This document shows positions 23,152 through 64,000 of a stretch of DNA of 64,000 nucleotides, piece by piece. This stretch comes from Octopus sinensis. Taxonomy: Eukaryota. Every line of letters starts with the position of its first letter. Positions within the stretch are counted from its first letter, which is position 1. The notes beneath the pieces were generated by a model. The model saw only the letters and a program-made list of their open reading frames with translations, searched no databases and was not told the origin of the DNA. The position numbers were made by a program, and so were the translations under genes. The stretch is taken from assembly GCF_006345805.1 (NCBI RefSeq), contig NC_043008.1:56358001-56422000 (forward strand), written 5' to 3'.

Positions 23152-23304
23152 ATGTTGGCGCGCCAAAATACATCGAGTAACTTATGGAAACTAACAGATT
23201 CTATGAAATCGGAATTTTCAGAAACTAAGAGAGATTTTCCCACGTCGAAAGATGAGGATTTTCTGTCAGATGACCAACAAGAACGTTTTCTCATGTACTT
23301 ACAG
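23152..23304 (+). CDS. Probable first coding exon of the NUDT12-like gene (MLARQNTSS..QERFLMYLQ)
   Basis: Non-repetitive open frame from an ATG ending at a consensus CAG|GTGAGT donor in phase 0. This matches the phase-0 acceptor at 38968, whose exon has no in-frame ATG. No homology recognised. Confidence 0.45.
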
Positions 23305-38967: not shown

Positions 38968-39106
38968 TGGGTGTGGCATTGTCGGAATCACACTGATTAC
39001 ACCAAAACTGTAAAGACCAACATCCCACAGGACATAGACATAAGCAATGAACTCCTTGAGAAATCAGCTGCAGGTGATGTACAAGAAGTGGCTCGCTTAC
39101 TTCGAG
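38968..39106 (+). CDS. NUDT12: NUDT12-like exon, start of ankyrin region (WVWHCR..NELLEKSAAGDVQEVARLLR)
   Basis: TTTTCAG acceptor and G|GTAAGT donor. SAAGDVQEVARLL resembles the NUDT12 N-terminal ankyrin helix (SAAEGDIAKL). Confidence 0.7.
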
Positions 39107-39197
39107 GTAAGTTACTGATATATATCATCAATTGACCACAGCTAGAGCACAACTTTGATCATAATTCTGGTCATATGGTTTCAGAGCGAGTTAGGGC

Positions 39198-39395
39198 TTA
39201 ACCATTTAACATTTAAACCAGATAATATCAGGCCCAAAAGTTCTACCGGTTTTATGTTCAATCCGTCCAGATTTGAGCTCCCACACCTGCCCTACAATAT
39301 CATTCTAAAAGTATAAGCACTCACGTCAATGAAATCTGAAAGCTACGAATGTGAATAAATATCATTACATTTAACAGAAGAATCTGAATATTAAA
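39198..39395. mobile_element. Diverged piggyBac-like MITE
   Basis: TTAACCATTTAACATTTAAACC start and CCCTACAATATCATTCTAAAA body, recalled from an abundant Octopus TTAA-flanked repeat. The right TIR is decayed. Confidence 0.4.
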
Positions 39396-39423
39396 CAACA
39401 ATAAAAAAAAAAAAATCAACAGA

Positions 39424-39866
39424 TATAGGCGCAGGAGTGGCTGTGTGGTAAGTAGCTTGCTAACCAACCACATGGTTCCGGGTTCAGTCCCACTGCGTGG
39501 CATCTTGGGCAAGTGTCTTCTGCTATAGCCCCGGGCCGACCAATGCCTTGTGAGTGGATTTGGTAGACGGAAACTGAAAGAAGCCTGTCGTATATATGTA
39601 TATACATGTATATGTATGTGTGTGTATGTGTTTGTGTGTGTATGTGTTTGTGTGTTTGTGTTTATCCCCCCCCCAACATCGCTTGACAACCGATGCTGGT
39701 GTGTTTACGTCCCCGTCACTTAGCGGTTCGGCAAAAGAGACCGATAGAATAAGTACTGGGCTTACAAAAGAATAAGTCCCGGGGTCGAGTTGCTCGATTA
39801 AAGGCGGCGCTTCAGCATGGCCGCAGTCAAATGACTGAAACAAGTAAAAGAGTAAAAGAGTAAGAG
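39424..39866 (+). mobile_element. SINE family A, full length, young
   Basis: AGGCGCAGGAGTGGCTGTGTGGTAAG head, GGTTCAGTCCC B box, (AAAAGAGT)n tail. Confidence 0.95.
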
Positions 39867-40169
39867 TAGGATTCTTCGACTAGAAGACGTCATCTTAAAT
39901 AAAGCAGACAACTAGCGATGGTTCGCAATTTTATGAATTGAGATCTAACGAATGTCTGTATTTGTCATTTATAGGAATATAGAAAAGCTTAATGATTCTT
40001 TAAGGTTATAATGGACACAGGTTCGTGTGTCATATAGCTAGCTAGAGGCGATGGCCTCTTGGAGCTAATCAACGGCAGCTTTAGTCTTATATTTGTGGAC
40101 TGCCATATTAGCTTGGCGATAACTGTTAATTTGCAGTACCGCTGCCGTAGTCTCATTTAGAAATTTTAA

Positions 40170-40960
40170 TATTTCGAGTCTTTTATGACTTATCTTTTTT
40201 CTATTTCACTCATGAGACTGCGGTCATGCTCGGGCACCGCCTTGAAGGGTTTTAGTCGAACAAATCGTCACCACTACTTACGTTTTAAATGTGTTTTTAA
40301 GTTTGGTATTTTCTATCGATTACCGAACCGCTAGTTCATGGAGTTATAAACAAACCAACTCCTGTTGTCAAATACACACAAACACATATGTACGTATGTA
40401 TGCATGCATGTATGTATGTATGTATGTATGTATGTATATATGTATGTATGTATGTATGTATGCATGTATGTCTGTATGTATGTATGTAGGCGTAGGAATA
40501 GCTTGCTTACGAACCACATGGTTCCGGGTTTAGTCCCACTTCGTGGCACCTTGGGAAAATGTCTTCTACTATAGCCTCGGGCCGACCAAAGCCTTTTGAG
40601 TGGATTTGGTTTGCGTGTGTGTATATGTTTATGTATATGTTTGTGTGTCTGTGTTTGTCCCCCCAGCATCGCTTGACAACCAATGCTGGTGCAATAAGTA
40701 CTAGGCTTCCAAATAATATGTCCTGGGGTCTATTTGCTCGACTAAAGGCGGTGCTCCAGCATGGCCACAGTCAAATGACTGAAACAAGTAAAAAAAAAAG
40801 AGTATGTACAGTTTCTGTATACCAAATTAACCTGCAAGGCAGTAGTTGGCTCGGCCTGGGGCTTTAGTAGAAGACACTTACCCAAGGTGCCACGCAGTGG
40901 AATTGAAACCGAAACCACGTTATTGGTTATAACTTAACTATGCAGCCATGCTTGCGCTCA
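40170..40960. mobile_element. Nested SINE A: a + copy (40487-40800) inside an older - copy
   Basis: The minus 3' part (40170-40370) and minus 5' part (40800-40960) bracket a plus copy. Confidence 0.7.
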
Positions 40961-41645
40961 GTTGTCACAATTCGGAAGTTATAAAAAAGCTGAATCCAGC
41001 CAACCCCAACCCGCTAAAAATGCTAAGCAATGCCCTGTCTATTGTGAGATCCTCTTTACATGAAATTCTTTAAGCTGGGAAAATTTCAGCTGAACTTCTT
41101 AATCAGAAGTTTAGCTTTCGAAACGGAAACTACGTTGAAAACGGACACTATATTAAAGAAATGTGTGAGAAAATTATATAAAACAAAAAAATCTATTTTT
41201 AATTAGTCACACACTGATATTAGAAACAATATATGATGGCAGGTATTGTTTTAGTTATTGTGTTTTTATTCGTTTTCAAAAGGAAATAGAGTGTTTTAGA
41301 AATCGTTTTGATTTTGTTTTTGAAATAAATGTTGTTGTTTTTTTATCCCCTGAAGTAAATTTAATTCGAGCATAGGGGGAAGTATTCTCGAGAGAAGAAA
41401 TCGTGGTAATTCAATAGATATGTTATCATAACTGAAGACTTTGCAACGAGTTTTTTTTTTTCTTTTTGTCTCTTTTTCTAGCGGGCATAAGTCAAAACAA
41501 AACTGTGCTCAACGTGTGTGTGTGCGTGTGCTTGTGCGCGCGCATAATACATGAAAACATATATAGATATACATGCATACATATACACACATATATATAT
41601 GCATACCAACATTAATACATACGTAAACACAAATATATTGTATAA

Positions 41646-41745
41646 NNNNNNNNNNNNNNNNNNNNNNNNNNNNNNNNNNNNNNNNNNNNNNNNNNNNNNN
41701 NNNNNNNNNNNNNNNNNNNNNNNNNNNNNNNNNNNNNNNNNNNNN
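41646..41745. other. Assembly gap (100 N)
   Basis: Run of n of round length, so the true size is probably unknown. Confidence 0.99.
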
Positions 41746-42469
41746 TTAAAGACAGACCAAAATCTAGACAAGCAAAGTCAGTTCTACACAACGGAACCAT
41801 CTGGAATCTATTTCAATATTCCAAAAAAAAAAAAATACTCCTGTGTTCTTCACAGTTCACTGTTTTATTTTATAATTCTTCCCATGGCTAATTTCTATAA
41901 ATACACACTTCTTCGTCATCTTGTCTCTCTCTTTCTTTCTCTCACTACCTTTCTCCCTCACTCTTCCTGTCACCCTTTCGGCAACTATATATGCGCATAT
42001 ATATATATGTATATATATATATACATACATACATATATATATATGAATAGAACATAAATAGTATATACATATATATATATTATATATATATATATAATAT
42101 ATATATATATATAATATAGTATATATAATATATATGTATGTATATATATATTATATATATATGTATGTATATATATATTATATAATTTATATTATATATA
42201 ATATATATATATACATATATATATTATATAATATATATATATATACCGACATACAATATACATATATATTATACACATACATATATTTTATGTATGTATG
42301 GTATATATCTATATGTGTGTGTGTGTGCGTGTGTGTGTGTATACATATGTGCTGGTGATGGTGTGGGCAGGAGTATTGGTGGTAGTAGTGATGGTGGCGG
42401 TGGTTGAGGCATTGGTGGTAGTGGTAATGGTGATAGAGGTCATGCTGGTGATGGTAACCGTACTGTTAC

Positions 42470-42750
42470 TCTTTTACTTGTTTCAGTCATTTGACTGTGG
42501 CCATGCTGGTGCACCGCCTTTAGTCAAACAAATCGACCCTAGGAGTTATTCTTTGTAAGCCTAGTACTTATTCTATCGGTCTCTTTTGTCGAACCACTAA
42601 TTTACGGGGACGTAAACACACCAGCATCGGTTGCCAAACGATGCCGGTGGGGACAAACACAGACACCACACTATATACACACACATACATACATATACAT
42701 ATAGATATATATATATATATTAATATAATTTATATATATATATATATATG

Positions 42751-42797
<47 letters not shown>

Positions 42798-42803
42798 AAT
42801 GTG

Positions 42804-42858
<55 letters not shown>

Positions 42859-43070
42859 ATAATATATATATATATATATATAATATATATATAAATGCAT
42901 ATATACGGCGGGCTTCTTTTCCGTTTCCGTCTATCAAATACACTCGCAAGGCTTTGGTCGGCCCGAGGCTATAGTAGAAGACACTTGCCCAAGGTGCCAC
43001 GCAGTGGGACTGAACCTGGAACCATGAGGTTCGTAAGCAAGCTTCTTACCACACAGCCGATCAAAGAGTG
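42470..43070 (-). mobile_element. SINE family A with expanded internal (TA)n
   Basis: Tail at 42470, head near 43060. Confidence 0.88.
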
Positions 43071-43431
43071 TACATATATATATATACTCACCCCATAGGT
43101 TTGAAATAATACTCTCTAATAGAAACATGTTAAACTGTGTCGCGGAGTAGATGAGAAGGGACAACTGAAGAAGAGGAATATTCTTTATGTTGTATGTCTC
43201 GTTTCTCTGCTTTTTTTTTCGTTGTTCCAAGAAAAAGTTCGTTTTTACGTTTTTGTTTTTATGTTTTCATTTCTCTTTGTGTTCTACGTTTTTTTATGTC
43301 CTGTACCCATATATGCATGTATATATACATATATATGCAGGTATGCACATATATGTATATATGCATATATTTATATATTATTTATATTATTTATATTATT
43401 ATATGATAGAACGCCACGCATCTTTTCCAAG

Positions 43432-43464
<33 letters not shown>

Positions 43465-43642
43465 ATGTGTATATCTATATATATATATATATGGGTGCAT
43501 TTTTATACATACATACATACACACATACTCAAACTCATATATTTATTCCTGTGCATATACATATACTTATGCGTATACACACACATATATATATAATGAA
43601 CTTTTGATGATGTCATACAAATATGCATGTATGCATGCATGC

Positions 43643-43674
<32 letters not shown>

Positions 43675-43709
43675 GTATATTATATATGCTTGTGAGTGTA
43701 TATATATAG

Positions 43710-43917
43710 CTTTTCAGTATGTGACCGCGTGAAGACCACTTGCAATTTTTTTCCATCTGTCCTCCCACCTCGGGATCTTTCTTTCTCCTATGTTTCCGAC
43801 GAAGAGCTCCGCTCGAAACGTCATGCCCTCCTTCTTCCCTTCTTTCCTGAGCGCCCAATAATACTTTATTTGTTCCACATCCTCGCGTTGTTGTCTTTTT
43901 GTTTTCTTGTTTGGTTT

Positions 43918-43920
<3 letters not shown>
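43710..43920 (+). mobile_element. Penelope-like fragment with mutated minimal hammerhead (43792-43822)
   Basis: GTTT-CCGACGA-A-GAGC-TCC-GCTC-GAAA-C-GTC, with U4 mutated to C. Homologous to 32965-33170. Confidence 0.65.
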
Positions 43921-43974
<54 letters not shown>

Positions 43975-44277
43975 CTGTATCTACTATAAATAAAACTCTC
44001 GATCTATCTTATGAGACGGTGTCAATGTTTGGGTGTGACATAATGACTCAGATTTTAACAATTGGTGCACGATGTTACTGAACACACGTTGCAGCGGAGT
44101 ACGGTGCAAGCATAAGTGCAGTAATGCTTTCTGTTTTTTGTGACATGTTTGTGCAACATGGACTGGTACCGTGTTCTGACTCACGTATGCAAAGAAACAC
44201 ATATGCAAATAAAACATGTGCGTCCACACGTGTATCGTGTGTGTGTGTGTGTGTGTGCATGCAAACATAAACACACA

Positions 44278-44309
<32 letters not shown>

Positions 44310-44320
44310 ACACATATATG

Positions 44321-44353
<33 letters not shown>

Positions 44354-44462
44354 TGAGCACTCATTTCGTCGTTCGACATTTACGTAGATATATATAAGCA
44401 CGCACGTACATACATACATACATATACACGCACACGCACGAACATATAGACATACACACACA

Positions 44463-44500
<38 letters not shown>

Positions 44501-44694
44501 GTAAGTATATAGTTTCTGCTGCCGTTGTTGTTGTTATTGTTGTGGTCATTGCTCTGTCATAGTCATCGTTATAGTAAACGTCTTGTCGTTTGTGTGATTT
44601 CTTCCTTGTGCGGTATCATGGACACACACACACACACATACACACACACACACCACACATACACACACACACACACACACGCATACACACACAC

Positions 44695-44930
44695 GTATTA
44701 TATATTCTGTTCTGCTCTATCTAGGCACAAGGCCCGAAATTTTGGGGAAGTGGGCCAGGCCAGTCGATTAGATCGACCCCAGTTCAAAACTGGTACTTAG
44801 TTTTTATCGACCCCGAAAGGATAAAAAGCAAAATCGATCTCAGTGGAATTTGAACTCAGAATGTACAGACAGACGAAATACCTCTCAGCATTTCGTCCGG
44901 CGTGCTAACGTTTCTGCCAGCTTGCCGCCT
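44695..44930 (-). mobile_element. SINE family B-related, diverged
   Basis: TTTATCGACCCCGAAAGGAT..AGCTTGCCGCCTT. Confidence 0.8.
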
Positions 44931-45710
44931 TATACGTATTACATATTGAGAGGGTGGGGGTGGGGGCGAGAGTGATGTAAAACAAATTTACAAGCGCGTG
45001 TTTTCAGTAGACAGCTTGTATATACACACGGGTAAAATTAAATTGGTATGTCCTGATTTGCATAACAGTTCAAACGCGAGTATTGAATTCATTAAAAATC
45101 TACTTGTTTTTTACTTCAATGAAACTAAAACAGGTGTTTACTAAAAATACACACTCCAAATTTAATCTTAATTACGTATTTATTCACATCCTCTACCGAT
45201 TAATTGATTAACTAATTAATTAACTTCACACTGACAGCTCTGATACTCTAACACATTTTAGGACACACTCTATGTCTGTTTTTGCATATTATGAATAATT
45301 CTGAGATAATATTTTCTCTGTAGTCATCAATTTGTACTACGTGACTCAGACTACACAACTCGAGAAGATAGAGTGTGTACTATTCGTCGTTAATTAAATT
45401 GATGCCTAGAAACCTTGGGTTTCCTGTCAGTAGAGTTATTCGACAATCGTACAAATATTTATGCACTGGGTGTTTGCTAGAATACCAGAAAAGAGCGCGG
45501 ATAACACTCAGAACCCCCATACGACTGCAGATAGCAGTAGACGCGTTCTGTCGGCAGAAAACACGAGGGTTTTGGATGAGAGGTTGAATGTAGTTTAAAT
45601 GAAAACTTAATGTAGTTTAAGTGGTCTTCCGAACGTTTGCCATCACTAACGTAATGTGTGTCACTGTGTGCATGCTACATACATACTTACATACATACAT
45701 ACATACATAC

Positions 45711-45753
<43 letters not shown>

Positions 45754-46474
45754 CTTCAAAATTGGAATGAGTGCTCATTGGAACAGTGGACTATGTAGTC
45801 CTGAAGACATTGTTTGAATAAAAGGCATAATGGTCACTTCTGGAATACTTTCTATCATAGCGTTCGCTCAGACAGGACTAACCTCTGGCTAAATAGCAAT
45901 AACAACTATGGGATGTGTATTGTATATCTCTATTGTTCTTATTTATGTAAATCCGGTAAACAAGACTGAGAAATTGAAAAATTCGACACCGCACAATTAC
46001 GAGCCTAATTTTTTATTTCTGATTGTAGCAGTTTTATTTTTTCTACGTTGCGAAAGGTTTCGGGAAAAACATGACATTTACAACATCACATTTCCAAGTA
46101 TCTTTCCTGATCTGAGGTTACTGAGTGTCAGTGTATTGTTTTTAATGGGAATCTATGATGTCATTAAAACGCCCTCCTCCCCTCTTCGCTGCTGTGATGG
46201 TGGTCTGTAGTCTATTGAAGACTACAGACACTTGGTTAATACCTTCTTTTGCTTTACACCTGTTTCAATCATTGGATTGCATCCATGATGGGGCACCGCC
46301 TTCAATGGTTTTTTGACGAACAAATCGACTTTAAAAGTGTTTACTTTTAAAATCTGGCACTTATTCCATCGCTTTCTTACGCCGAACCGCTAATGCTACG
46401 GAGACATGAATGAATCAACGTTGATTATCAAGCGATGAAAGTGGGTATAGACATGAACTCAATGACACACACAT

Positions 46475-46512
<38 letters not shown>

Positions 46513-46519
46513 TATGTAT

Positions 46520-46811
46520 AAGTGGAGACGCAATGGCCCAGTGGTTAGGGCAGTGGACTCGCGGTCGTAGGATCGCGGTTTCGATTCCCAGACCGGGCGT
46601 TGTGAGTGTTTATTGAGCGAAAACACTTAAAAGCTCCACGAGGCTCCGGCAGGGGATGGTGGTGATCCCTGCTGTATTCTTTCACCACTCTTTCTTCTGT
46701 TGGTCAGCTCGCTTAGCCAGCGGGGTGGCGTCATTCGAAGGCTAAAACAATGCGAACGCATTGTGACCAGCGATGTGTAACTACATCTGATGGACTGGTC
46801 GGTCACGTGAT

Positions 46812-46817
<6 letters not shown>
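46520..46817 (+). mobile_element. SINE family C, tail type 1
   Basis: TGGAGACGCAATGGCCCAGTGGTTAGGG head; GGTCACGTGATCACGTGAT end. Confidence 0.92.
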
Positions 46818-46854
<37 letters not shown>

Positions 46855-47484
46855 AATATATATATGTGCGCGTGTGCATCTATATATGTGTGTGTGTGCG
46901 TGTGTGTGTTATGTAATGGGTTATATCTAAAAATAAATGAAAATTAAGTTATCAGCTGTTAGGGTGTATATACATTGTTTGGACACCCTGTATGTGTATA
47001 AATATGTCATGGGAAAAATAAGTATATTTTTCTCCCTCCCATGTCTTCGTTAGCCTCAGAAATTAAAACAAGGGAGAAATTTTTAGTCAAAAGTACACAT
47101 AATGTTTGCATAAATTTGAATATGTTTATTTACAGAACGTCACGTGTCCAGCAGTGTGTTTAATTGTGTATGTGCAAGTATTGTATTTTGACTTGTTACT
47201 TATCCAAAATTGTGACTTCTCTGATTAAGAAGTTCTTGTTAGTACACACACGCGCACACAAACATACGCACACACACACACGCGCATTTATATATAGACA
47301 TATATATGTATTTATTCACATACATGTATACGTAGACACATACATATTGTAAACATACATATCGTTTATGCAAGCTGGCTAACAAGTGGAGCTAACTGAA
47401 ACCATTTGATCTTCTCGATGTATCTCTAGACTCTCCCATCTCTATCACTTCTTCACATCTACCCCTCACCCCAACATTTACCCA

Positions 47485-47850
47485 CTTTACTCTTTTACTC
47501 TTTTACTCTTTTACTTGTTTCAGTCATTTGACTGCGGCCTTGCTGGAGCACCGCCTTTAGTCGAGCAAATCGACCCCGGGACTTATTCTTTGTAAGCCCA
47601 GTACTTATTCTATCGGTCTCTTTTTGCCGAACCGCTAAGTTACGGGGACATAAACACACCAGCATCGGTTGTCAAGCAATGCTAGGGGGACAAATACAGA
47701 CACACAAACATATACACACACAAAACATATATATATACATATATACGACAGGCTTCTTTCAGTTTCCGTCTACCAAATCCACTCACAAGGCATTGGTCGG
47801 CCCGGGGCTATAGCAGAAGACACTTGCCCAAGATGCCACGCAGTGGGACT
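47485..47850 (-). mobile_element. SINE family A, 5' truncated
   Basis: Near-identical to the 24103 copy; stops at GTGGGACT. Confidence 0.92.
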
Positions 47851-47877
47851 TTATTTAATTCTTTATTGCCCACAAGG

Positions 47878-48222
47878 GGCTAAACACAGAGGGGACAAAC
47901 AAGGACAGACAAAGCGATTAAGTCGATTATATCGACCCCAGTGCGTAACTAGTACTTATTTAATCGACCCCGAAAGGATGAAAGGCAAAGTTGAACTCGG
48001 CAGAATTTGAACTCAGAACGTAGCGGCAGACGAAATACCTATTTCTTTACTATCCACAAGGGGCTAATCACAGAAGGGACAAACAAGGACAGACAAAGGG
48101 ATTAAGTCGATTATATCGACCCCAGTGCGTAACTGGTACATATTTAATCGACCCCGAAAGGATGAAAGGCAAAGTCGACCTCAGCAGAATTTGAACTCAG
48201 AACGTAGCGGCAGACGAAATAA
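47878..48222 (-). mobile_element. SINE B head-less tandem dimer
   Basis: Two ~180-bp units joined at CGGCAGACGAAATA|CCTATTTCTTTACT. Confidence 0.88.
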
Positions 48223-48230
48223 TCGATATC

Positions 48231-48933
48231 CCCTTTTACTAAGTCACTGTTTACGACGTTTAACATTTCGATAGAAGACCCATTTTCGTTACCAGTCACA
48301 AGTTTATCCAAAAAGCGTGAAATGAGTTCGCGAGAATGGAGGGAAGAGCAGATGTCAACTCGGGATTTGCGGTTGCTTTCGGATATTTCACGAGGCCCCC
48401 ATTTTGCCAAGTTAAGGAACTTTTCCAAGTTGTTGAAAATGGCGATGAACAGTTGTATGGTTTGAACTAAGCTTTATTGCCAATTCTTCAACTGATAATG
48501 CAGGATTTTCTTCAAGTAAAGCCTCAAGGAGCTTATCATCAAACTCAACTGGACGTCCTGTTCGATCTTCATCTTCAAGGCTGAAATCTCCACTTCTGAA
48601 TTTTGCAAACCATCTTCTGCAAGTTCTCCCATTCAAGCATTCTTTCCCATAAACTGAGTGTATGTTTCGAGTCGCTGCGGCTGCAGAGTTTTCTTTTTTG
48701 TACTCAAAGCATTATGTGCCTCAAATGCTCTTTGCATACTTCCATGTTAGAAAGGGTTTTAATCAAAGAAAGTTTAATTCTATTATTCTGTAAAATAATA
48801 TCTAATTAGTTTAAATGCACACAAATGTATAAAAATAATTTTTACTTCTATTAGACATTCTAAAATACTATTAAATTTCATTCAATTTTAATAAAAGGTA
48901 AAATCGGACAGAACTTATGGGAAGACCTGATAT
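48231..48933 (-). mobile_element. mariner transposon 5' half (defective)
   Basis: Translates to RTCRRWFAKFRSGDFSLEDEDRTGRP..LSVEELA..HTTVHRH and KWGPREI..RVDICSSL..FLDKLVTGNE (decayed WVPHEL and TGDEKW). 5' TIR TATCAGGTCTTCCCATAAGTTCTGTCCG. Confidence 0.92.
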
Positions 48934-49087
48934 ATAGAAGAGGCACAAAAATTCTTAAATATGAAAATATACCTATTCTGCTTTGTTTTATTTCATTTTA
49001 TTTTGCTTCGTTCCATATCTCTTCATTGAAAAATTTGTATACATAAGGAATTTGATAATTTCCTCCGACTAACCTTATTGTTATTGC

Positions 49088-49119
<32 letters not shown>

Positions 49120-49162
49120 TGCGTACATATATGTGTGTATACATTCATGTATATATACATTG

Positions 49163-49198
<36 letters not shown>

Positions 49199-50615
49199 GT
49201 ATGCATTACATATATATGCCTGTGTATATGTACACACACACATACACACACACACACACATACACACACACACATACATACACATAGGTAGATAAATTGC
49301 TAGAAACAGAGAGTTGGGAGAACTCAAAGGTTATTTGCAATAAAATAGCAAAGAATTAAAAATATAGAAAAGCAAAATTTGTAACAAAATAGAAAATTAA
49401 ATAAAATTAACCCCTTAATCACACACTATACATGTAGGTTATTGACTTTTGAACAGTACGTACGGGTTGCATGAGTATGCCAAACGGGCACAAAAAGAAA
49501 TCTCTTTTCTTAAGGTAAATTTTTATACTTATTTTCATTTTAAATAATAAAAAATAAACTATTGCCAGTCTAACGCGGAATAAAATTAACTATCTCATTA
49601 TTGAAAAAAACCGTAAAATATTCACTATTCTCCGCATCCGGTGTGAACTTAAAGTCATCTGAGATTCCGGCATTGTTGACGTGAAACGAATGTTCACATG
49701 AAGAAAATCAGTGCATTTTTTTCTATCCAGAGCTAGTTTAAGTATCGGTTTCTTTTGCACTATCTATAGCATCATCGTGAACATCATCTATTTGCGAATT
49801 CATCTCTCCATCGATAAGAGCCGCTTGCGTTTTGGCACATTTGACGAAGAAGACGCTCGGGCTTGGATACATGGCCATATCTACAAAAACTTTTTGAAAC
49901 ATCAATTGGTGATGTCAGCTTCTCAAGGGTTAACCAGATGTTTGACTTTTGACTCGAGTTTCACGCTACTACCATCCGCAGGCGAGATCTCTAACTACTC
50001 AGTTTGGTTGTGTGTTTATATTAATTGTTTTACGTATGAATCCCATGCTTGTGTTTATTGTCTGACGTTTGCTGATTGATGTTATTTTTCTGCTTCACGA
50101 GTGTTTATTTTTGTGGAGTGGTGCTTCTTTTTCTTGTGTTTATTGATAAGGAGTTACGGGCGTATTTTTTTATTTGTTTATTTAGTTTTGTCTGCTTATC
50201 TAAGATATTTTCCTCGGTTTTTTAGTCAAGTTCCTTTATCGTAAAGTGTTTGTAAATATTGTTGTTTTGATGAACATTAGTTAACTTATAATAATTTGCT
50301 TGTTTGTGAGTAAATGTAACTGTAAAACTAATTAAGGATGTTTACTTATGACAAAATAAGTGGTATTTCATAGCTGAGTGATTTTATCGCTACTTAAAGA
50401 AAACGTCTGTTAAACTAATTATTGATTTTGTTTATTTCACCCAGGGTGTATGCTTTTTTGAATTATAAGTCTCTCTCTTTCTCTCTCTCTCTTTCACCTA
50501 ACATGTATATACATACATCTATTTATACACATACATATGTATACACATATATATACAAATATGGCTGTGTGTGAATATTTGCGTCCCTCTCTATACACAC
50601 ACACACACACACACA

Positions 50616-50669
<54 letters not shown>

Positions 50670-50743
50670 TTATATATATTTATACATATATATGTCTATA
50701 TATGTATGTATATATATATATCTATGTATACATATATATATGT

Positions 50744-50809
<66 letters not shown>

Positions 50810-50940
50810 TCATGCACAGGCGCACATACATACATATACCTACATGAATACATATATGCATACATACATATACCTACATGAATACATATATGCATACACA
50901 CATGCTTAAAGTTATGTTTTATTTTCTTGTATTTGATCAG

Positions 50941-51647
50941 GTGTAGAAGTGATCTGCAGACAAACGGAGGCCACACTGCTGCTGACATTGCCAAAATATG
51001 GAGTAGAAAAAGAATTGCTTCTATACTGAGTAACGAGAGCTCATCCCCGAGATCATCGATTTCTAACGAGAGCAACAAACCTCTTATAGAAAACCTGGAG
51101 AAGAAACACGTTTCCTTCAATGTCTTACAACGCTGCTCAGACAAACGGAAAGATCTTCTATGGCTGGATACCAAGAAGAAGGACGTCAGCACTCAATTCC
51201 TTTTATTTTCAGATCTTCAAATCTATGTTTCACCAGAAAAACAATCTAACGACGATACACCTCAGAGACATCAACTAATCGCGGCTAGTTATAAAGATAT
51301 CGATTTTTTTTTGAACGAAGAAAAATCATTAAACATCTTTTTAGGAACGGAACCACTTCAGACGAAAAACGAACAATCAAAGAAAGACCGTGCATGGTTC
51401 GCTATTGATGTGTCTTCGATGGACAAAGATAAACTTGAGAGTATCTTGCCCAATGGTCACTTCGTATCACCTTTCCCTGCTTTTTTGAATTTGAATGAAT
51501 ACGAGAGGTGTATCTTTTCTGAAGCTTGTTCGTTGATTTTGTGGCACATGGACCACCAATTCTGCCCCACCTGCGGTTGCCGAACGATCCCGGAAGACGC
51601 CGGACTTAAACGAGAATGCACTAACGGAAAATGTTTGAGTCGATCAG
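50941..51647 (+). CDS. NUDT12: NUDT12-like exon: last ankyrin repeat, NudC-like N-terminal domain and C4 zinc finger
   Basis: CRSDLQTNGGHTAADIAKIW matches NUDT12 GCD..N...TALDIA.FW. RAWFAID; WHMDHQFCPTCG-x13-C-x4-C. CAG acceptor in phase 2; GTTCGT donor in phase 1. Confidence 0.95.
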
Positions 51648-52642: not shown

Positions 52643-52786
52643 GTTTATTGAATACGAACTACCCACGTGTGGACCCTAATGTTGTAGTTCTTGTCGTCAA
52701 TTCTTCCCAAACTCACTGTCTGATGGGGCTCAAGAAAAATTTCCCCTCCAATATGTTCTTCTGTGTCTCTGGTTATATCGAACCTG
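52643..52786 (+). CDS. NUDT12: NUDT12-like exon: start of the Nudix domain (NYPRVDPNVVVLV..MFFCVSGYIEPG)
   Basis: YPRVDP and GYIEPG motifs; CAG acceptor and GTAAGA donor, both phase 1. Confidence 0.96.
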
Positions 52787-54860: not shown

Positions 54861-54883
54861 CTTCACACACACACATACACACA

Positions 54884-54949
<66 letters not shown>

Positions 54950-55030: not shown

Positions 55031-55182
55031 GTGAATCAATTGAAGATGCATGCACGCGAGAAATATTGGAACAAGTGAATCTCGATGTTGTGAAAGTTGA
55101 ATATCATTCTAGCCAACCGTGGCCATACCCTGTGGTACTCCTGGTCGGGTGCACTGTTCATGTGGCAACCGAAGTTGTTAAG
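55031..55182 (+). CDS. NUDT12: NUDT12-like exon: Nudix box and SQPWP motif
   Basis: [33 protein letters not shown]; TAG acceptor in phase 1, GTAGGT donor in phase 0. Confidence 0.96.
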
Positions 55183-55263: not shown

Positions 55264-55365
<102 letters not shown>

Positions 55366-56808: not shown

Positions 56809-57111
56809 GACAAGTTCTCTTAACCTGAATAAGAATTGCAGGGCACTTGTAAATTATTATGGTATACTCTTGTACTGGGCGTTTTCCACCTAATTTAAAT
56901 TATGTTGGACATACCTCTGCTCTTATGTTTTATGTTTCCAACTCCAAGATACAAAGCATACATTTCTTCCGCTAAGTAATTTGCTTTTATAGTAAACCCT
57001 ATGCTCGTACCTGAAAACAAATACTCGTTTCTCTTCTGCCTCGCACTACCAGTCAAGAGTCGCGAGAGATACCTCTAGTCATTTTGTTCGATACTCGAAT
57101 TTTGCCAATCC

Positions 57112-57625
57112 GCCAATAACAAAGCAACCTATTTCTTTACTACTCACAAGGGGCTAAACACAGAGGCCAATAACAAAGCAACCTATTTCTTTACTACCCA
57201 CAAGGGGCTAAACACAGAGGCCAATAACAAAGTAACCTATTTCTTTACTACCCACAAGGGGCTAAACACAGAGAGGACAAACAAGAACAGACAAACGGAG
57301 TAAGTCGATTATATCGACCCCAGTGCGTAACTGGTAGTTATTTAATCGACCCCGAAAGGATGAAAGGCAAAGTCGACCTCGGCGGAATTTTGAACTGAGA
57401 ACGTATCGGCAGACGAAATACCTATTTCTTTACTACCCACAAGGGGCTAAACACAGGGAGGACAAACAAGGACAGACAAACGGATTAAGTTGATTACATC
57501 GACCCCATTGCATAACTGGTACTTATTTAATCGATGCCGAAAGGATGAAAGGCAAAGTCGACCTCGGCGGAATTTGAACTCAGAGCGTAAAGACGAGCGA
57601 AATACTGTTAAGCATTTTGCCCGGT

Positions 57626-57768: not shown

Positions 57769-57927
57769 GTTAACGAAGAAGAACTAAAAGATGCCACTTG
57801 GTTCCATTTCTCCGAAGCTGAACTCATGATTAAAGGCAAACACGAAGACGGTTACAAAGTACCATCTAAACAAACACTAACTTACCAACTTCTAGATTCC
57901 TGGTTGGAAACTCATAGGGATGAGTAA
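57769..57927 (+). CDS. NUDT12: NUDT12-like terminal exon (VNEEELKDATWF..YQLLDSWLETHRDE*)
   Basis: Polypyrimidine-CAG acceptor in phase 0. ELKDATWF matches EIEDARWF. TAA stop at 57925. Confidence 0.95.
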   Translation, partial: VNEEELKDATWFHFSEAELMIKGKHEDGYKVPSKQTLTYQLLDSWLETHRDE

Positions 57928-60239: not shown

Positions 60240-61760
60240 TGATTTCAAACTTTGGTACAAGGCCAGCAAATTCGAGGAGGGGGTAAGCAGCTTGCATAGA
60301 CCCTATTACTCAACTGGTACTTGTTTTATCGACCCCGAAAAGATGAAAGGCAAAGTCGACCTCTGCGGAATTTGAACTCAGAACGTAAAGACGGACGAAA
60401 TGCCGCTAAGCATTTCGCTCGACGCGCTAGTGATTCTGCCAGCTTGCCGCCTTAACAACAACAACGACTACAACAACAACAACAACAACAATAATAATTG
60501 TAATAATGAGAATGATAGTAATTTAATGTTTTAGCATAATATTATATATATATATAATAACAATAAACTTTGAATGGACACATGTCACAGATACAACGGA
60601 ATCTACTGTAATCACCCCAGGAATACGGACTGTGATCTTAAGAGTCATGTAACTTGTGGAAACGCGCGTAGTGATGCATTAAATTTTTGTGAATTACATC
60701 CACGGATTATTGTTACTACTATTGTATTTATTCTATATTATATCGGTACAGCTCAATGCAACTGTGGCCGGCATAATGGAGTTTGAGCTTTATTTGCATA
60801 TTTAAAACGTTTCCCGTAAACAAATACATAAACACATACATGCGTATACATATACATATATATATGTATAAATATGTTCTGCTGAGGTTTTTAGAGGCTT
60901 TAGTGTAAATAATTTTTGAATAAATTACTTCATAATTTATAAAATGTCTTTCATTGTTATTATAAATACTATTTTCCTTTTAATGATCTTGTCAAGAAAG
61001 AGGCCTCTGCAGTTGATAAGCAGAAAGGATGAATAATGGGTTCAAATGTTTGCATTCCAACAGAGTGGATTGTACTAAAATAAACCAAGGGCTAGATGGT
61101 TGTGTTAAACCGGGCAAACGGATTAAGGGTACAACCCATGAGATAAATGGAAACGTTTATTTTCGTCTGCACGATTCCCGATTACCAAAATTTTATTCAG
61201 AAAGATTTTGATATGAATCTATGGTGGAAATCACTTGTCCAAAGTTCTACGCAGCAGGATTTATCTTGAAGTTACGCAGATGCGAAGCGAACTTCATAAC
61301 ATTATAGCAATATTTTCGTCTAAAACGTTTCAAATATCGTTTTCAAGTTTTGGTACAAGACCAGCAATTTTGAGGAGAATGGGGAGTCTATTATATTGAC
61401 ACCAGTGCTCAAACGGAATTTATTTTATCGACCCCGAAAAGATAAAATAGAATTTGAGCTCAGGACGTAAAGAGACGAAATAAATGCTGTTAAGTATTTT
61501 GTCCAACACGCTCACGGTTCTGCTAACTGCCTTATATTGCTTCAAATTTTGGCACAGACCAGCGTTTTAGAGAAAGGGGCTAAGTCTATTACATCGATAT
61601 TACATCGCTCAAATAGTACTTATTTTTATCCACTTATTTTTGCGAAAGGATGAAAGGCAAAATCGACCCGGGCGGAATCTGAACTCAGAACGAAAAGACA
61701 GACGAAATGCCGCTAAGCATTTCGACCATCGTGCTAACGATTCTGCCAGCTTGCCACCTA
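60240..61760 (-). mobile_element. Cluster of three SINE B-related copies (60240-60452, 61340-61530, 61545-61760)
   Basis: Each has TTTATCGACCCCGAAAAG or AAAGGATGAAAGGCAAA and the TGCCAGCTTGCC(G/A)CCT head. Confidence 0.8.
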
Positions 61761-61762
61761 AA

Positions 61763-61829
<67 letters not shown>

Positions 61830-62299
61830 TAGTTGAACAATATGGTGCCTTTATTTTAATGGTGACCGATGTATAGAGTGAGTTTCTTTGCCCTAGGTCT
61901 CGGGAAAACACCCAGCAAGAAATGGAAAGAAAATTGAAAGAAGCGGATAATGACAATAATAATAATATTGCATATTGTAATAGTCGATTTCATGTAAAAG
62001 TCGACTCCTTGTTTTTGGTAAAAAAATCGGAAATTTTCCATAGATTCTGTATAAAAGTTTCACGACAACAATTATGGGTCAAGTTACCGTATCATCCTGT
62101 ACGTACAAATAACACTGTTACAAAATTGTGTGGCTACCTTATTGTAGCCTGCTCTATAGGTGGAATGCTTGGTGATTATAATGGAATTCTAGGTGCTTAT
62201 TGTAAAACACCATTTAATAGCAAGCACTACATATCTGTTGATGGGTGCTACACCACCATTACTAAAATGTATGTACAGGATATGCATACATCTTCAAGG

Positions 62300-63677: not shown

Positions 63678-64000
63678 GTACAGTCGTGTACTTGAAGGTT
63701 TAAAATTTCTCCGTCATTTTACGTAAAAATTTCCCCCAGAAAAAAACCCCTACAATTATATAGCAGCGTTTAAACTAAAAGTAATTGAAGTTGCTGAGGA
63801 GACAAGTAAGTGTGTAGCAGCAAGAGAATTTTGTGTTTCAGAGAAACTTGTGAGAGACTGGAGAAAGATATCAAACAATGCTAAAAAAAAAAAAGATGTG
63901 CGAACAGGAAAAACCTAGCAAGTCGCCATAATTGGAGAAAACAGTTGCAGGGTGGGTACTTGAAAATCGTCAAAGTGAAAAGTGTGTTACCTGTGAAGCC
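63678..64000 (+). mobile_element. pogo-like transposase N-terminus (Brinker-type DBD plus CENP-B HTH), defective, runs off the window
   Basis: From 63757: YIAAFKLKVIEVAEETSKCVAAREFCVSEKLVRDWRK..P*LEKTVAGWVLENRQ. A TA-CAGT candidate terminus lies near 63679. Confidence 0.8.

What the first reader, a model, noticed from the sequence alone, without database searches (positions are those of the whole stretch)
55031..55083. NUDT12-like protein has a naturally degenerate Nudix box (EE to EQ, G to N): candidate pseudo-enzyme
The box reads [23 protein letters not shown] against the consensus GX5EX7REUXEEXGU. The last metal-binding Glu is Gln (CAA, 55072-74) and the Gly is Asn (AAT, 55078-80). That Glu corresponds to E. 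coli NudC E178, where E-to-Q is the standard catalytically impaired mutant (recalled knowledge). The frame, splice phases, C4 zinc finger, YPRVDP and SQPWP are all intact. This suggests a retained NAD/NAD-cap-binding protein with lost or altered hydrolase activity. A-to-I editing cannot turn CAA into Glu, although two edits could turn AAT into GGT (speculative).
Basis: partly seen in the sequence, partly recalled or inferred. Interest (0 to 1): 0.75.

Follow-up and report, generated by a model that had tools for sequence, protein, structure and literature searches.

The report
Octopus NUDT12 with natural E-to-Q active site
The octopus version of NUDT12, an enzyme that cleaves NAD(H) and removes NAD caps from RNA, naturally carries the glutamate-to-glutamine change that biochemists engineer to inactivate its relatives, yet the gene is conserved under purifying selection in four octopod species, so it is probably a weakened or non-catalytic NAD-binding protein, though nobody has assayed it.

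Summary
Exon 6 of the Octopus sinensis NUDT12 orthologue (+ strand, 55031-55182) encodes ...[21 protein letters not shown] (55072-74) is Gln and AAT (55078-80) is Asn, and all splice sites and the reading frame are intact.

The Gln is not an error. The same CAA codon is present in the independently assembled O. bimaculoides and Argonauta hians genomes, and O. vulgaris protein also has Gln. Among 183 NudC/NUDT12-family proteins that I fetched, this position is Glu in all 178 non-octopod sequences.

The position aligns with E. coli NudC E178, mouse Nudt12 E374 (a ligand of Mg1) and MutT E57. NudC E178Q has almost undetectable activity but still binds NAD. MutT E57 contributes at least 10^5-fold to kcat.

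All other catalytic and NAD-contact residues are kept or conservatively replaced. The Nudix domain is under purifying selection (dN/dS 0.06-0.15). The lineage also evolved about twice as fast as other molluscs and lost the C-terminal peroxisomal signal.

The Gly-to-Asn change is not diagnostic. That position is non-Gly in 9% of homologues with a canonical EE, and it varies N/S among octopods.

Verdict: a real, conserved, lineage-specific variant of a known enzyme. A strongly impaired hydrolase that still binds NAD or NAD caps is the best reading, at about 0.55, but it is untested.

The parts
23152..23304 (+). Coding exon 1 of the NUDT12 orthologue (MLARQ...MYLQ), with the start codon at 23152
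   Evidence: tblastn of the O. vulgaris and O. bimaculoides proteins against the window. The donor CAG|GTGAGT was read. There is no in-frame ATG upstream.
38968..39106 (+). Coding exon 2 (WVWHCRN...ELLEKSAAGDVQEVARLLR plus one base), the start of the ankyrin region
   Evidence: tblastn; acceptor TTTTCAG| and donor CGAG|GTAAGT read.
40005..40020 (+). 16-nt mini-exon (GT TAT AAT GGA CAC AG) used by the RefSeq model to give 'GYNGHR'. It is probably an annotation patch for the missing ankyrin exon 3, not a real exon.
   Evidence: P0001 reads ...ARLLRGYNGHRCRSDL, whereas the O. vulgaris, O. bimaculoides and Argonauta proteins have a 35-aa ankyrin exon here. The mini-exon was located.
41646..41745 (.). 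Assembly gap of 100 N. It is the likely place where ankyrin exon 3 (DGVTTD...DMLLENG) and much of the intron were lost from this assembly.
   Evidence: N run found. tblastn for the exon finds nothing in the window. In O. bimaculoides exons 2, 3 and 4 are about 10 kb and 47 kb apart, whereas exons 2 and 4 are 11.8 kb apart here.
50941..51647 (+). Coding exon 4: the last ankyrin repeat, the N-terminal Nudix-like sub-domain, and the C4 zinc ribbon (Cys codons at 51563, 51572, 51617 and 51632)
   Evidence: Pfam PF09297 Zn_ribbon_NUD, E 1.2e-5. Alignment to mouse and human NUDT12 structures.
52643..52786 (+). Coding exon 5: YPRVDP (52660-77; its Tyr is the equivalent of the adenine-stacking Y318) and the start of the Nudix box, GYIEPg (52771-86)
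   Evidence: The role of this residue comes from the mouse Nudt12 structure paper.
55031..55182 (+). Coding exon 6: the rest of the Nudix box (to 55083) and SQPWPYP (55111-31)
   Evidence: Pfam PF00293 NUDIX, E 7e-11.
55072..55074 (+). CAA = Gln, in place of the second Glu of the Nudix 'EE' pair. It is the equivalent of mouse Nudt12 E374 (Mg1 ligand), NudC E178 and MutT E57.
   Evidence: Literature.
55078..55080 (+). AAT = Asn at the Gly position of the Nudix box. It is AGT = Ser in O. bimaculoides, Ser in O. vulgaris protein (no DNA available) and AAT in Argonauta. This is a variable position.
57769..57927 (+). Last coding exon. It contains the equivalent of the Mg ligand E415 (third E of NEEEL). 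It ends ...THRDE-TAA, with no PTS1-like tripeptide.
   Evidence: Survey of C-termini.

Best explanation
The window holds the single detectable NUDT12 orthologue of Octopus sinensis. Its layout is ankyrin repeats, an N-terminal Nudix-like sub-domain, a C4 zinc ribbon and a Nudix catalytic domain.

In octopods the side-chain ligand of the first catalytic metal (the second Glu of the Nudix 'EE' pair) has been replaced by Gln and fixed. The fold, the dimer-forming zinc ribbon, the other two Glu metal ligands, the Arg and Glu of the Nudix helix, and the residues that stack on and contact NAD are all kept. The gene has stayed under purifying selection.

The most likely consequence is a protein that still binds NAD(H) or the NAD cap of RNA but hydrolyses the pyrophosphate bond far more slowly than canonical NUDT12. 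That would make it a strong hypomorph or a pseudo-enzyme. It has also lost the C-terminal peroxisomal targeting tripeptide, so it presumably acts in the cytosol, where its ankyrin domain could still tether RNA or partners.

Shown here: the sequence state, its conservation, its uniqueness in the family, the purifying selection, the accelerated lineage and the predicted fold.

Inferred, not shown: reduced catalysis (by analogy with NudC E178Q and MutT E57), retained ligand binding, and cytosolic location.
For: 1. The codon and frame are verified.

2. The change is fixed. The box reads REILEQVNL in O. sinensis, REILEQVSL in O. vulgaris and O. bimaculoides, and RELLEQTNL in Argonauta hians. CAA is present in three independent genome assemblies.

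3. The change is unique. This position is Glu in 178 of 178 non-octopod family members, from bacteria to vertebrates, including 20 or more bivalves and gastropods.

4. The position is functionally critical. It aligns with NudC E178. NudC E178Q has 'almost undetectable' NAD hydrolysis yet was crystallised with NAD bound (PMC5034116). In mouse Nudt12, E374 coordinates Mg1 together with the A354 carbonyl (bioRxiv 10.1101/474478). MutT Glu57, at the same box position and the same metal site, contributes at least 10^5 to kcat (PMC9173781).

5. The other functional residues are retained. These are the equivalents of E370, E373, E415, R369, Y318 and Q/W of SQPWP, with the conservative changes F356Y, I132V and M201L in NudC or mouse numbering.

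6. Selection is purifying. dN/dS for the Nudix domain is 0.15 (O. sinensis vs O. bimaculoides). Against Argonauta it is about 0.06-0.09, with dS saturated.

7. AlphaFold2 gives mean pLDDT 90.6 with a confident Nudix helix. The best PDB fold matches are human and mouse NUDT12, at E about 1e-37.

8. There are signs of a functional shift. Octopods deviate at 30% of 111 columns that are at least 90% conserved in 41 other metazoan NUDT12, against a mean of 4% and a maximum of 19% in the others. The relative-rate test shows about twice as many unique changes (p from 1e-2 to 1e-6). In addition, 39 of 41 other NUDT12 end in -[AS][NHRSK]L, whereas octopods end in RDE, RVE or PLI.
Against: - There is no biochemical, transcript or read-level evidence for the octopus protein.
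- Only one of three Glu metal ligands is changed, and the Gln amide oxygen can still coordinate Mg2+ or Mn2+.
- The mouse 'dead' mutant in the paper I read is the double E373Q/E374Q. The single E374Q was not reported there.
- Strong purifying selection on the whole active-site region is also what a still-active enzyme would show.
- A faster-evolving lineage could have acquired compensating changes that I cannot see.
- The global TM-score of the model to NUDT12 crystal structures is only 0.50. I attribute this to a different N- and C-domain arrangement in a monomer model of a domain-swapped dimer, but I did not test that.
Confidence: 0.55

Rival explanations
1. It is still a competent hydrolase. 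The Gln oxygen, helped by the neighbouring Ser that replaces the invariant Ala354 or by Mn2+, still holds metal 1. The octopod enzyme would then work with altered metal dependence, pH profile or substrate preference rather than being inactive.
For: All other catalytic and substrate-contact residues and the fold are conserved, and the domain is under purifying selection. The other Mg1 ligand position (A354, main-chain carbonyl) is Ser in all octopods, so the site may have been remodelled as a unit. Some Nudix-box glutamates tolerate loss: NudC E177A keeps half its activity, and a Takifugu NUDT12 has A at the first E of EE.
Against: The exact substitution at the exact position nearly abolishes NudC activity. 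The equivalent MutT residue is worth at least 10^5 in kcat. No other of 178 family members tolerates a non-Glu here. Ser at the A354 position also occurs in homologues with a canonical EE, so it need not be compensatory (P0165, P0182, P0187, P0190, P0194).
Confidence: 0.33
2. It is a sequencing, assembly or annotation artefact, or a decaying pseudogene.
For: This assembly does have a gap and lacks one ankyrin exon of the gene, and the RefSeq model patches the frame with a 16-nt mini-exon.
Against: The same CAA codon appears in three independent assemblies of species whose synonymous sites are saturated relative to each other. All seven exons are intact with GT-AG borders in O. bimaculoides and Argonauta, and dN/dS is well below 1.
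Confidence: 0.02
3. RNA editing restores a canonical box in the mRNA.
For: Coleoid cephalopods recode many transcripts by A-to-I editing (recalled knowledge). AAT could become GGT through two edits, and the related species carry AGT, an A/G difference at the same codon.
Against: By the genetic code, A-to-I edits of CAA can only give CGA or CGG (Arg) or CAG (Gln), never Glu. The critical ligand therefore cannot be restored. The Gly position is not critical in this family.
Confidence: 0.01

Closest known systems
Mammalian NUDT12 (NAD(H) diphosphatase and NAD-cap decapping enzyme; PDB 6SCX, 6O3P)
   Same: Same domain order: ankyrin repeats, N-terminal Nudix-like sub-domain, C4 zinc ribbon, Nudix domain. 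It is the best sequence match (E 2e-66 and 4e-66, about 37% identity) and the best fold match. Equivalents of Y318, E370, E373 and E415 and the SQPWP motif are conserved.
   Different: E374 (Mg1 ligand) is Gln. A354 is Ser and F356 is Tyr. There is no C-terminal PTS1-like tripeptide. The protein deviates at about 30% of otherwise conserved columns.
E. coli NudC E178Q (engineered catalytic mutant; PDB 5ISY)
   Same: The same residue change at the same Nudix-box position: REVMEQSG versus the octopus REILEQVN. The mutant folds, dimerises and binds NAD, but barely hydrolyses it.
   Different: It is a laboratory mutant of a bacterial enzyme that lacks ankyrin repeats. The octopus change is natural, fixed and accompanied by many other substitutions that could modify its effect.
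Non-catalytic Nudix-homology domains (DBC1, the NUDT9-H domain of TRPM2, Nudix-type transcription regulators, CFIm25)
   Same: These are Nudix folds kept for nucleotide or ligand binding or for regulation rather than hydrolysis (PMC5389931). This is the functional class the octopus protein may be entering.
   Different: Those domains have lost most of the Nudix box or belong to other sub-families. The octopus protein keeps 2 of 3 Glu ligands and an otherwise near-canonical box, and its lack of activity is not demonstrated.
NUDT13 and yeast Npy1 (other eukaryotic NudC-family NADH pyrophosphatases)
   Same: Same sub-family, with the zinc ribbon, Nudix box and SQPWP motif.
   Different: They lack the ankyrin domain. 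The octopus protein has it and matches NUDT12 best, so it is not a NUDT13 orthologue. Whether octopods also have NUDT13 was not tested.

Membership tests
NUDT12 / NudC sub-family of Nudix hydrolases | Nudix fold (Pfam PF00293) in the C-terminal domain | tested here: met
   PF00293 E 7.1e-11, 42.7 bits against a cut-off of 21.1. AlphaFold2 model pLDDT 90.6; top PDB fold hits are human and mouse NUDT12.
NUDT12 / NudC sub-family of Nudix hydrolases | NADH-pyrophosphatase zinc ribbon with four Cys | tested here: met
   PF09297 E 1.2e-5, 25.4 bits against a cut-off of 24.8. The sequence is CPTC...CTNGKC, encoded at 51563-51634.
NUDT12 / NudC sub-family of Nudix hydrolases | Sub-family motif SQPWPFPxS downstream of the Nudix box (the motif definition is recalled knowledge) | tested here: met
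   The window encodes SQPWPYPVV at 55111-55137. The core SQPWP, with Q192 and W194 of NudC, is kept; F is replaced by Y and the final S by V.
NUDT12 / NudC sub-family of Nudix hydrolases | Complete Nudix box GX5EX7REUXEEXGU | tested here: not met
   The box is [23 protein letters not shown]. The second E of EE is Q and the G is N. The E is invariant in 178 of 178 other members.
NUDT12 / NudC sub-family of Nudix hydrolases | NAD(H) pyrophosphatase or deNADding activity | not testable with these tools
   This needs recombinant protein and enzyme assays.
Metazoan NUDT12 orthologue group | N-terminal ankyrin repeats fused to the NudC-like catalytic domain | tested here: met
   Ank Pfam families are recorded on the O. 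bimaculoides, O. vulgaris and Argonauta products. The window has the first and last ankyrin-coding parts (38968-39106 and 50941 onward), but the middle exon is missing at an assembly gap.
Metazoan NUDT12 orthologue group | C-terminal PTS1-like tripeptide (peroxisomal targeting) | tested here: not met
   Octopods end in -RDE, -RVE or -PLI, whereas 39 of 41 other metazoan NUDT12 end in -[AS][NHRSK]L.
Metazoan NUDT12 orthologue group | Single-copy orthologue, with no canonical second copy in the same genome | tested here: inconclusive
   Only one cluster of octopod NUDT12-like proteins was recovered in two word-indexed searches that include the NCBI octopus proteomes. The searches are not exhaustive, and NUDT13 was not looked for.
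Pseudo-enzyme / non-catalytic Nudix protein | Loss of a residue essential for catalysis, with the fold retained and purifying selection | tested here: met
   E-to-Q at the Mg1 ligand. dN/dS is 0.06-0.15 in the Nudix domain. The model is confident.
Pseudo-enzyme / non-catalytic Nudix protein | Demonstrated absence of catalytic activity | not testable with these tools
   There is no assay. This is inferred only from NudC E178Q and MutT E57.

The most novel reading that the evidence does not exclude
Octopod NUDT12, and perhaps coleoid NUDT12 in general, may have turned from an NAD-cap decapping enzyme into a cytosolic, non-hydrolysing NAD-cap or NAD(H) 'reader'. It would be a natural substrate trap: it would bind NAD-capped RNAs through the intact pocket and the ankyrin domain, then sort, protect or sequester them instead of decapping them. 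That would be the first natural reader protein derived from a deNADding enzyme.
Probability: 0.15. Interest if true: 0.8.

Novelty: new variant of a known kind. Interest (0 to 1): 0.5.

Why it matters
NUDT12 is one of the few known eukaryotic enzymes that remove NAD caps from RNA, and it also controls NAD(H) turnover. A whole animal lineage whose only detectable NUDT12 carries the textbook inactivating substitution, yet keeps the gene under purifying selection, gives two things. It is a natural experiment on what NUDT12 does besides catalysis, such as NAD or NAD-cap binding and scaffolding through its ankyrin repeats. It is also a ready-made pair (wild type against a Q-to-E revertant) for testing how much the Mg1 glutamate matters in the eukaryotic enzyme. 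It further raises the question of how octopods dispose of NAD-capped RNA and peroxisomal NADH. If the protein proves fully active, the result is still useful, because it would show that the 'invariant' second Glu of the Nudix EE pair can be replaced.

Tried and rejected
1. A protein search with the 51-aa exon-6 peptide alone, meant to pull out cephalopod single-exon fragments, returned nothing because the word index needs three shared words. That search was wasted.

2. The exhaustive representative search was run with the full-length O. vulgaris protein. Its ankyrin repeats filled most of the 150 rows with unrelated ankyrin proteins. It still gave 43 extra family members and the fragment P0151.

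3. P0151 (ENA contig, 53% identical to octopus exon 4) and P0276 (Logan, 55%) look like the same gene in more distant, unnamed cephalopod-like species. The 10-kb flank of P0151 (L003) contains no downstream Nudix exons.

4. A scan of JGI metagenome contigs with the exon-6 peptide found only bacterial NudC and some non-cephalopod eukaryotic exons, all with a canonical EE.

5. The artefact or pseudogene reading and the editing-rescue reading were considered and rejected; see the rival explanations.

6. Gly-to-Asn as evidence of degeneracy was rejected after the family survey.

7. A354S as a compensating change was considered but not adopted, because Ser occurs there in homologues with a canonical EE.

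Full report
**Observation.**
The intron ends in AG at 55029-30. Exon 6 (55031-55182) starts with GT, which completes a Gly codon begun by the last base of exon 5 (52786). The exon then reads [17 protein letters not shown], with CAA at 55072-74 and AAT at 55078-80. Together with the end of exon 5, the Nudix box is [23 protein letters not shown], against GX5EX7REUXEEXGU. The four 3' coding exons are 50941-51647, 52643-52786, 55031-55182 and 57769-57927. All have GT-AG borders, and they join into one open frame ending in TAA. The four-Cys zinc ribbon, YPRVDP and SQPWP are present.

**Identity.**
The translated model is 100% identical to RefSeq XP_029643503.1, 'peroxisomal NADH pyrophosphatase NUDT12-like [Octopus sinensis]'. 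The window is therefore octopus nuclear DNA. Pfam finds NUDIX (E 7e-11) and the NADH-pyrophosphatase zinc ribbon (E 1e-5). The best solved-structure matches are the mouse and human NUDT12 catalytic domains (E 2e-66 and 4e-66), followed by bacterial NudC.

An AlphaFold2 model of the catalytic region built on a 50-sequence alignment has mean pLDDT 90.6. Its best fold matches in the PDB are again human and mouse NUDT12 (E about 1e-37), then NudC. The global TM-score is only 0.50. I take this to reflect a different N- and C-domain arrangement in a monomer model of a domain-swapped dimer, but I did not test that.

The gene occupies 23152-57927 on the + strand. One 35-residue ankyrin exon, present in O. 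vulgaris, O. bimaculoides and Argonauta hians, is absent from the window. It most probably lies in the 100-N assembly gap at 41646-41745. The RefSeq model bridges the hole with a 16-nt mini-exon at 40005-40020.

**Is the Gln real, and how widespread is it?**
The Nudix helix reads as follows:
- REILEQVNL in O. sinensis
- REILEQVSL in O. vulgaris and O. bimaculoides
- RELLEQTNL in Argonauta hians

I rebuilt the complete seven-exon CDS of O. bimaculoides (L002) and A. hians (L001) from genomic DNA, and each translates exactly to its annotated protein. The codon is CAA in all three genomes.

These range from bacteria to vertebrates and include many bivalves and gastropods. It is Gln only in the five octopod entries.

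The Gly position is a different matter. It is N, S, A, C or F in 16 of the 178 sequences that have a canonical EE. It also differs (AAT against AGT) between O. sinensis and O. bimaculoides; O. vulgaris protein also has Ser. The Gly-to-Asn half of the finding is therefore ordinary variation.

**What the residue does.**
- HMMER aligns the octopus REILEQVN column for column with REVMEQSG of PDB 5ISY, the engineered E. coli NudC E178Q protein.
- NudC E178Q shows 'almost undetectable' NAD hydrolysis. It was used precisely because it still binds NAD, giving the NAD complex structure (PMC5034116). It is used as the inactive control in vivo (PMC10654059).
- In the 1.6 Å mouse Nudt12 structure, Glu374 coordinates Mg1 together with the carbonyl of Ala354. 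Glu370 and Glu415 hold Mg2/Mg3 and Mg1/Mg2 respectively. The published dead mutant is the double E373Q/E374Q (bioRxiv 10.1101/474478).
- In MutT the same box position (Glu57, with the Gly37 carbonyl, metal site A) contributes at least 10^5 to kcat (PMC9173781).

**The rest of the active site.**
Mapping the residues named in those papers onto the octopus protein gives:
- Retained: equivalents of E370, E373, E415/NudC E219, R369/NudC R173, E361/NudC E165, Y318/NudC Y124, and Q192 and W194 of SQPWP.
- Conservative changes: F356/NudC F160 is Tyr, NudC I132 is Val, and NudC M201 is Leu.
- Ala354 is Ser in all octopods. Ser also occurs there in a few homologues with a canonical EE.

A single metal ligand has been neutralised inside an otherwise preserved NAD pocket.

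**Selection and rate.**
- Nei-Gojobori dN/dS between O. sinensis and O. bimaculoides is 0.29 for the whole CDS and 0.15 for the Nudix domain.
- Against Argonauta, synonymous sites are saturated (dS about 2) and dN/dS is about 0.06-0.10. The gene is clearly maintained by selection.
- The octopod protein is nonetheless an outlier. It departs from the consensus at 30% of 111 columns that are at least 90% conserved among 41 other metazoan NUDT12. The other sequences depart at a mean of 4% and a maximum of 19%.
- Tajima relative-rate tests against five other molluscs with three outgroups show about twice as many octopus-specific changes (p from 0.016 to 3e-6).
- 39 of 41 other NUDT12 end in a PTS1-like -[AS][NHRSK]L. 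Octopods end in -RDE, -RVE or -PLI. Peroxisomal import by the usual C-terminal signal has probably been lost. This is an inference, and the PTS1 rule is recalled knowledge.

**Older than octopods?**
Two exon-4-only fragments are 53-55% identical to octopus and 79% identical to each other: P0151 from an ENA contig and P0276 from Logan. They share 7 of the 8 octopod-specific replacements at conserved columns in that exon. The divergence of this gene therefore began before the octopod radiation, presumably in other cephalopods, although the source organisms are not named. I could not reach their Nudix exon. Whether the E-to-Q change is octopod-specific or older is unknown.

**Interpretation.**
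The best-supported reading (about 0.55) has three parts:
- The protein is a folded, selectively maintained NUDT12 orthologue.
- Its pyrophosphohydrolase step is strongly impaired.
- Its NAD(H) or NAD-cap binding is retained, and it now acts in the cytosol.

Non-catalytic Nudix domains that bind NAD-related ligands or regulate partners are a known class: DBC1, TRPM2 NUDT9-H and transcription regulators (PMC5389931). Mammalian NUDT12 has non-catalytic interactions through its ankyrin domain and with bleomycin hydrolase (PMC9283932).

The main rival (about 0.33) is that the enzyme still works, with Gln as a neutral oxygen ligand and possibly an altered metal or substrate preference. Purifying selection on the pocket fits both readings, so only an assay can separate them. 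An artefact or pseudogene is excluded by three assemblies and dN/dS well below 1. A-to-I editing cannot produce a Glu codon from CAA.

**Limits.**
- No reads, RNA-seq or protein data were available.
- No named decapodiform or nautiloid orthologue was recovered.
- The word-indexed searches recovered only one octopod NUDT12-like cluster, but they are not exhaustive.
- NUDT13 and DXO were not examined.
- No paper in the held library links NUDT12 with octopus in a relevant way.

**Verdict.**
This is a real and conserved lineage-specific variant of a known enzyme family, and it gives a sharp, cheaply testable hypothesis. It is moderately interesting rather than extraordinary. Pseudo-enzymes are common, and loss of activity has not been shown.

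Noticed in passing
window 39106-50941 (gap at 41646-41745; mini-exon 40005-40020): The 35-aa middle ankyrin exon of NUDT12 (DGVTTD...DMLLENG in O. vulgaris) is absent from the window. The exon 2 to exon 4 distance is 11.8 kb here, against about 57 kb in O. bimaculoides. The RefSeq model XP_029643503.1 bridges the hole with a 16-nt mini-exon that gives 'GYNGHR'. This looks like an assembly collapse plus an annotation patch.
   Followed up: partly
window 57913-57927; L001 and L002 last exons: Octopod NUDT12 proteins lack the PTS1-like C-terminal tripeptide found in 39 of 41 other metazoan NUDT12. They end in RDE, RVE or PLI. The O. vulgaris model P0126 also carries a 39-aa C-terminal extension past the O. 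sinensis stop position, which is probably an annotation difference.
   Followed up: partly
window 55078-55080: The Gly-position codon is AAT (Asn) in O. sinensis but AGT (Ser) in O. bimaculoides, and O. vulgaris protein also has Ser. This is the only amino-acid difference between O. sinensis and O. vulgaris in exon 6. It is an A/G difference at a site where A-to-I editing would mimic the sister-species allele. This is speculative and was not checked against RNA data.
   Followed up: no
They share most octopod-specific replacements at conserved columns but keep Gln at the position where Octopus and Argonauta have His (GGQTA against GGHTA). They probably come from other cephalopods.
   Followed up: partly
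window 63727-63915 (+): An open stretch encodes a Brinker-type DNA-binding domain (Pfam PF09607, E 2e-10). It is probably a fragment of a pogo/Tigger-like transposon downstream of NUDT12.
   Followed up: partly
window, e.g. 44725-44972, 47654-48271, 57079-57600, 60300-60452, 61324-61873: Many copies of one interspersed repeat are present. In translation it recurs as '...RKDERQSRPRRNLNSERKDERN...' or '...[30 protein letters not shown]...IDPERMKGKVDL...', in several frames and introns. It has no Pfam match and looks like a SINE- or TE-derived element. The introns also hold long (CA)n, (TA)n, (CAG/CAA)n and (AAT)n microsatellites, including some immediately flanking exon 6 (54870-54945 and 55270-55355).
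   Followed up: no
P0028 (Takifugu rubripes NUDT12): One vertebrate NUDT12 reads REVEAESGV. The first Glu of the EE pair (the E373 equivalent, not a direct metal ligand in the mouse structure) is Ala. This shows that the position is less constrained than the second Glu.
   Followed up: no
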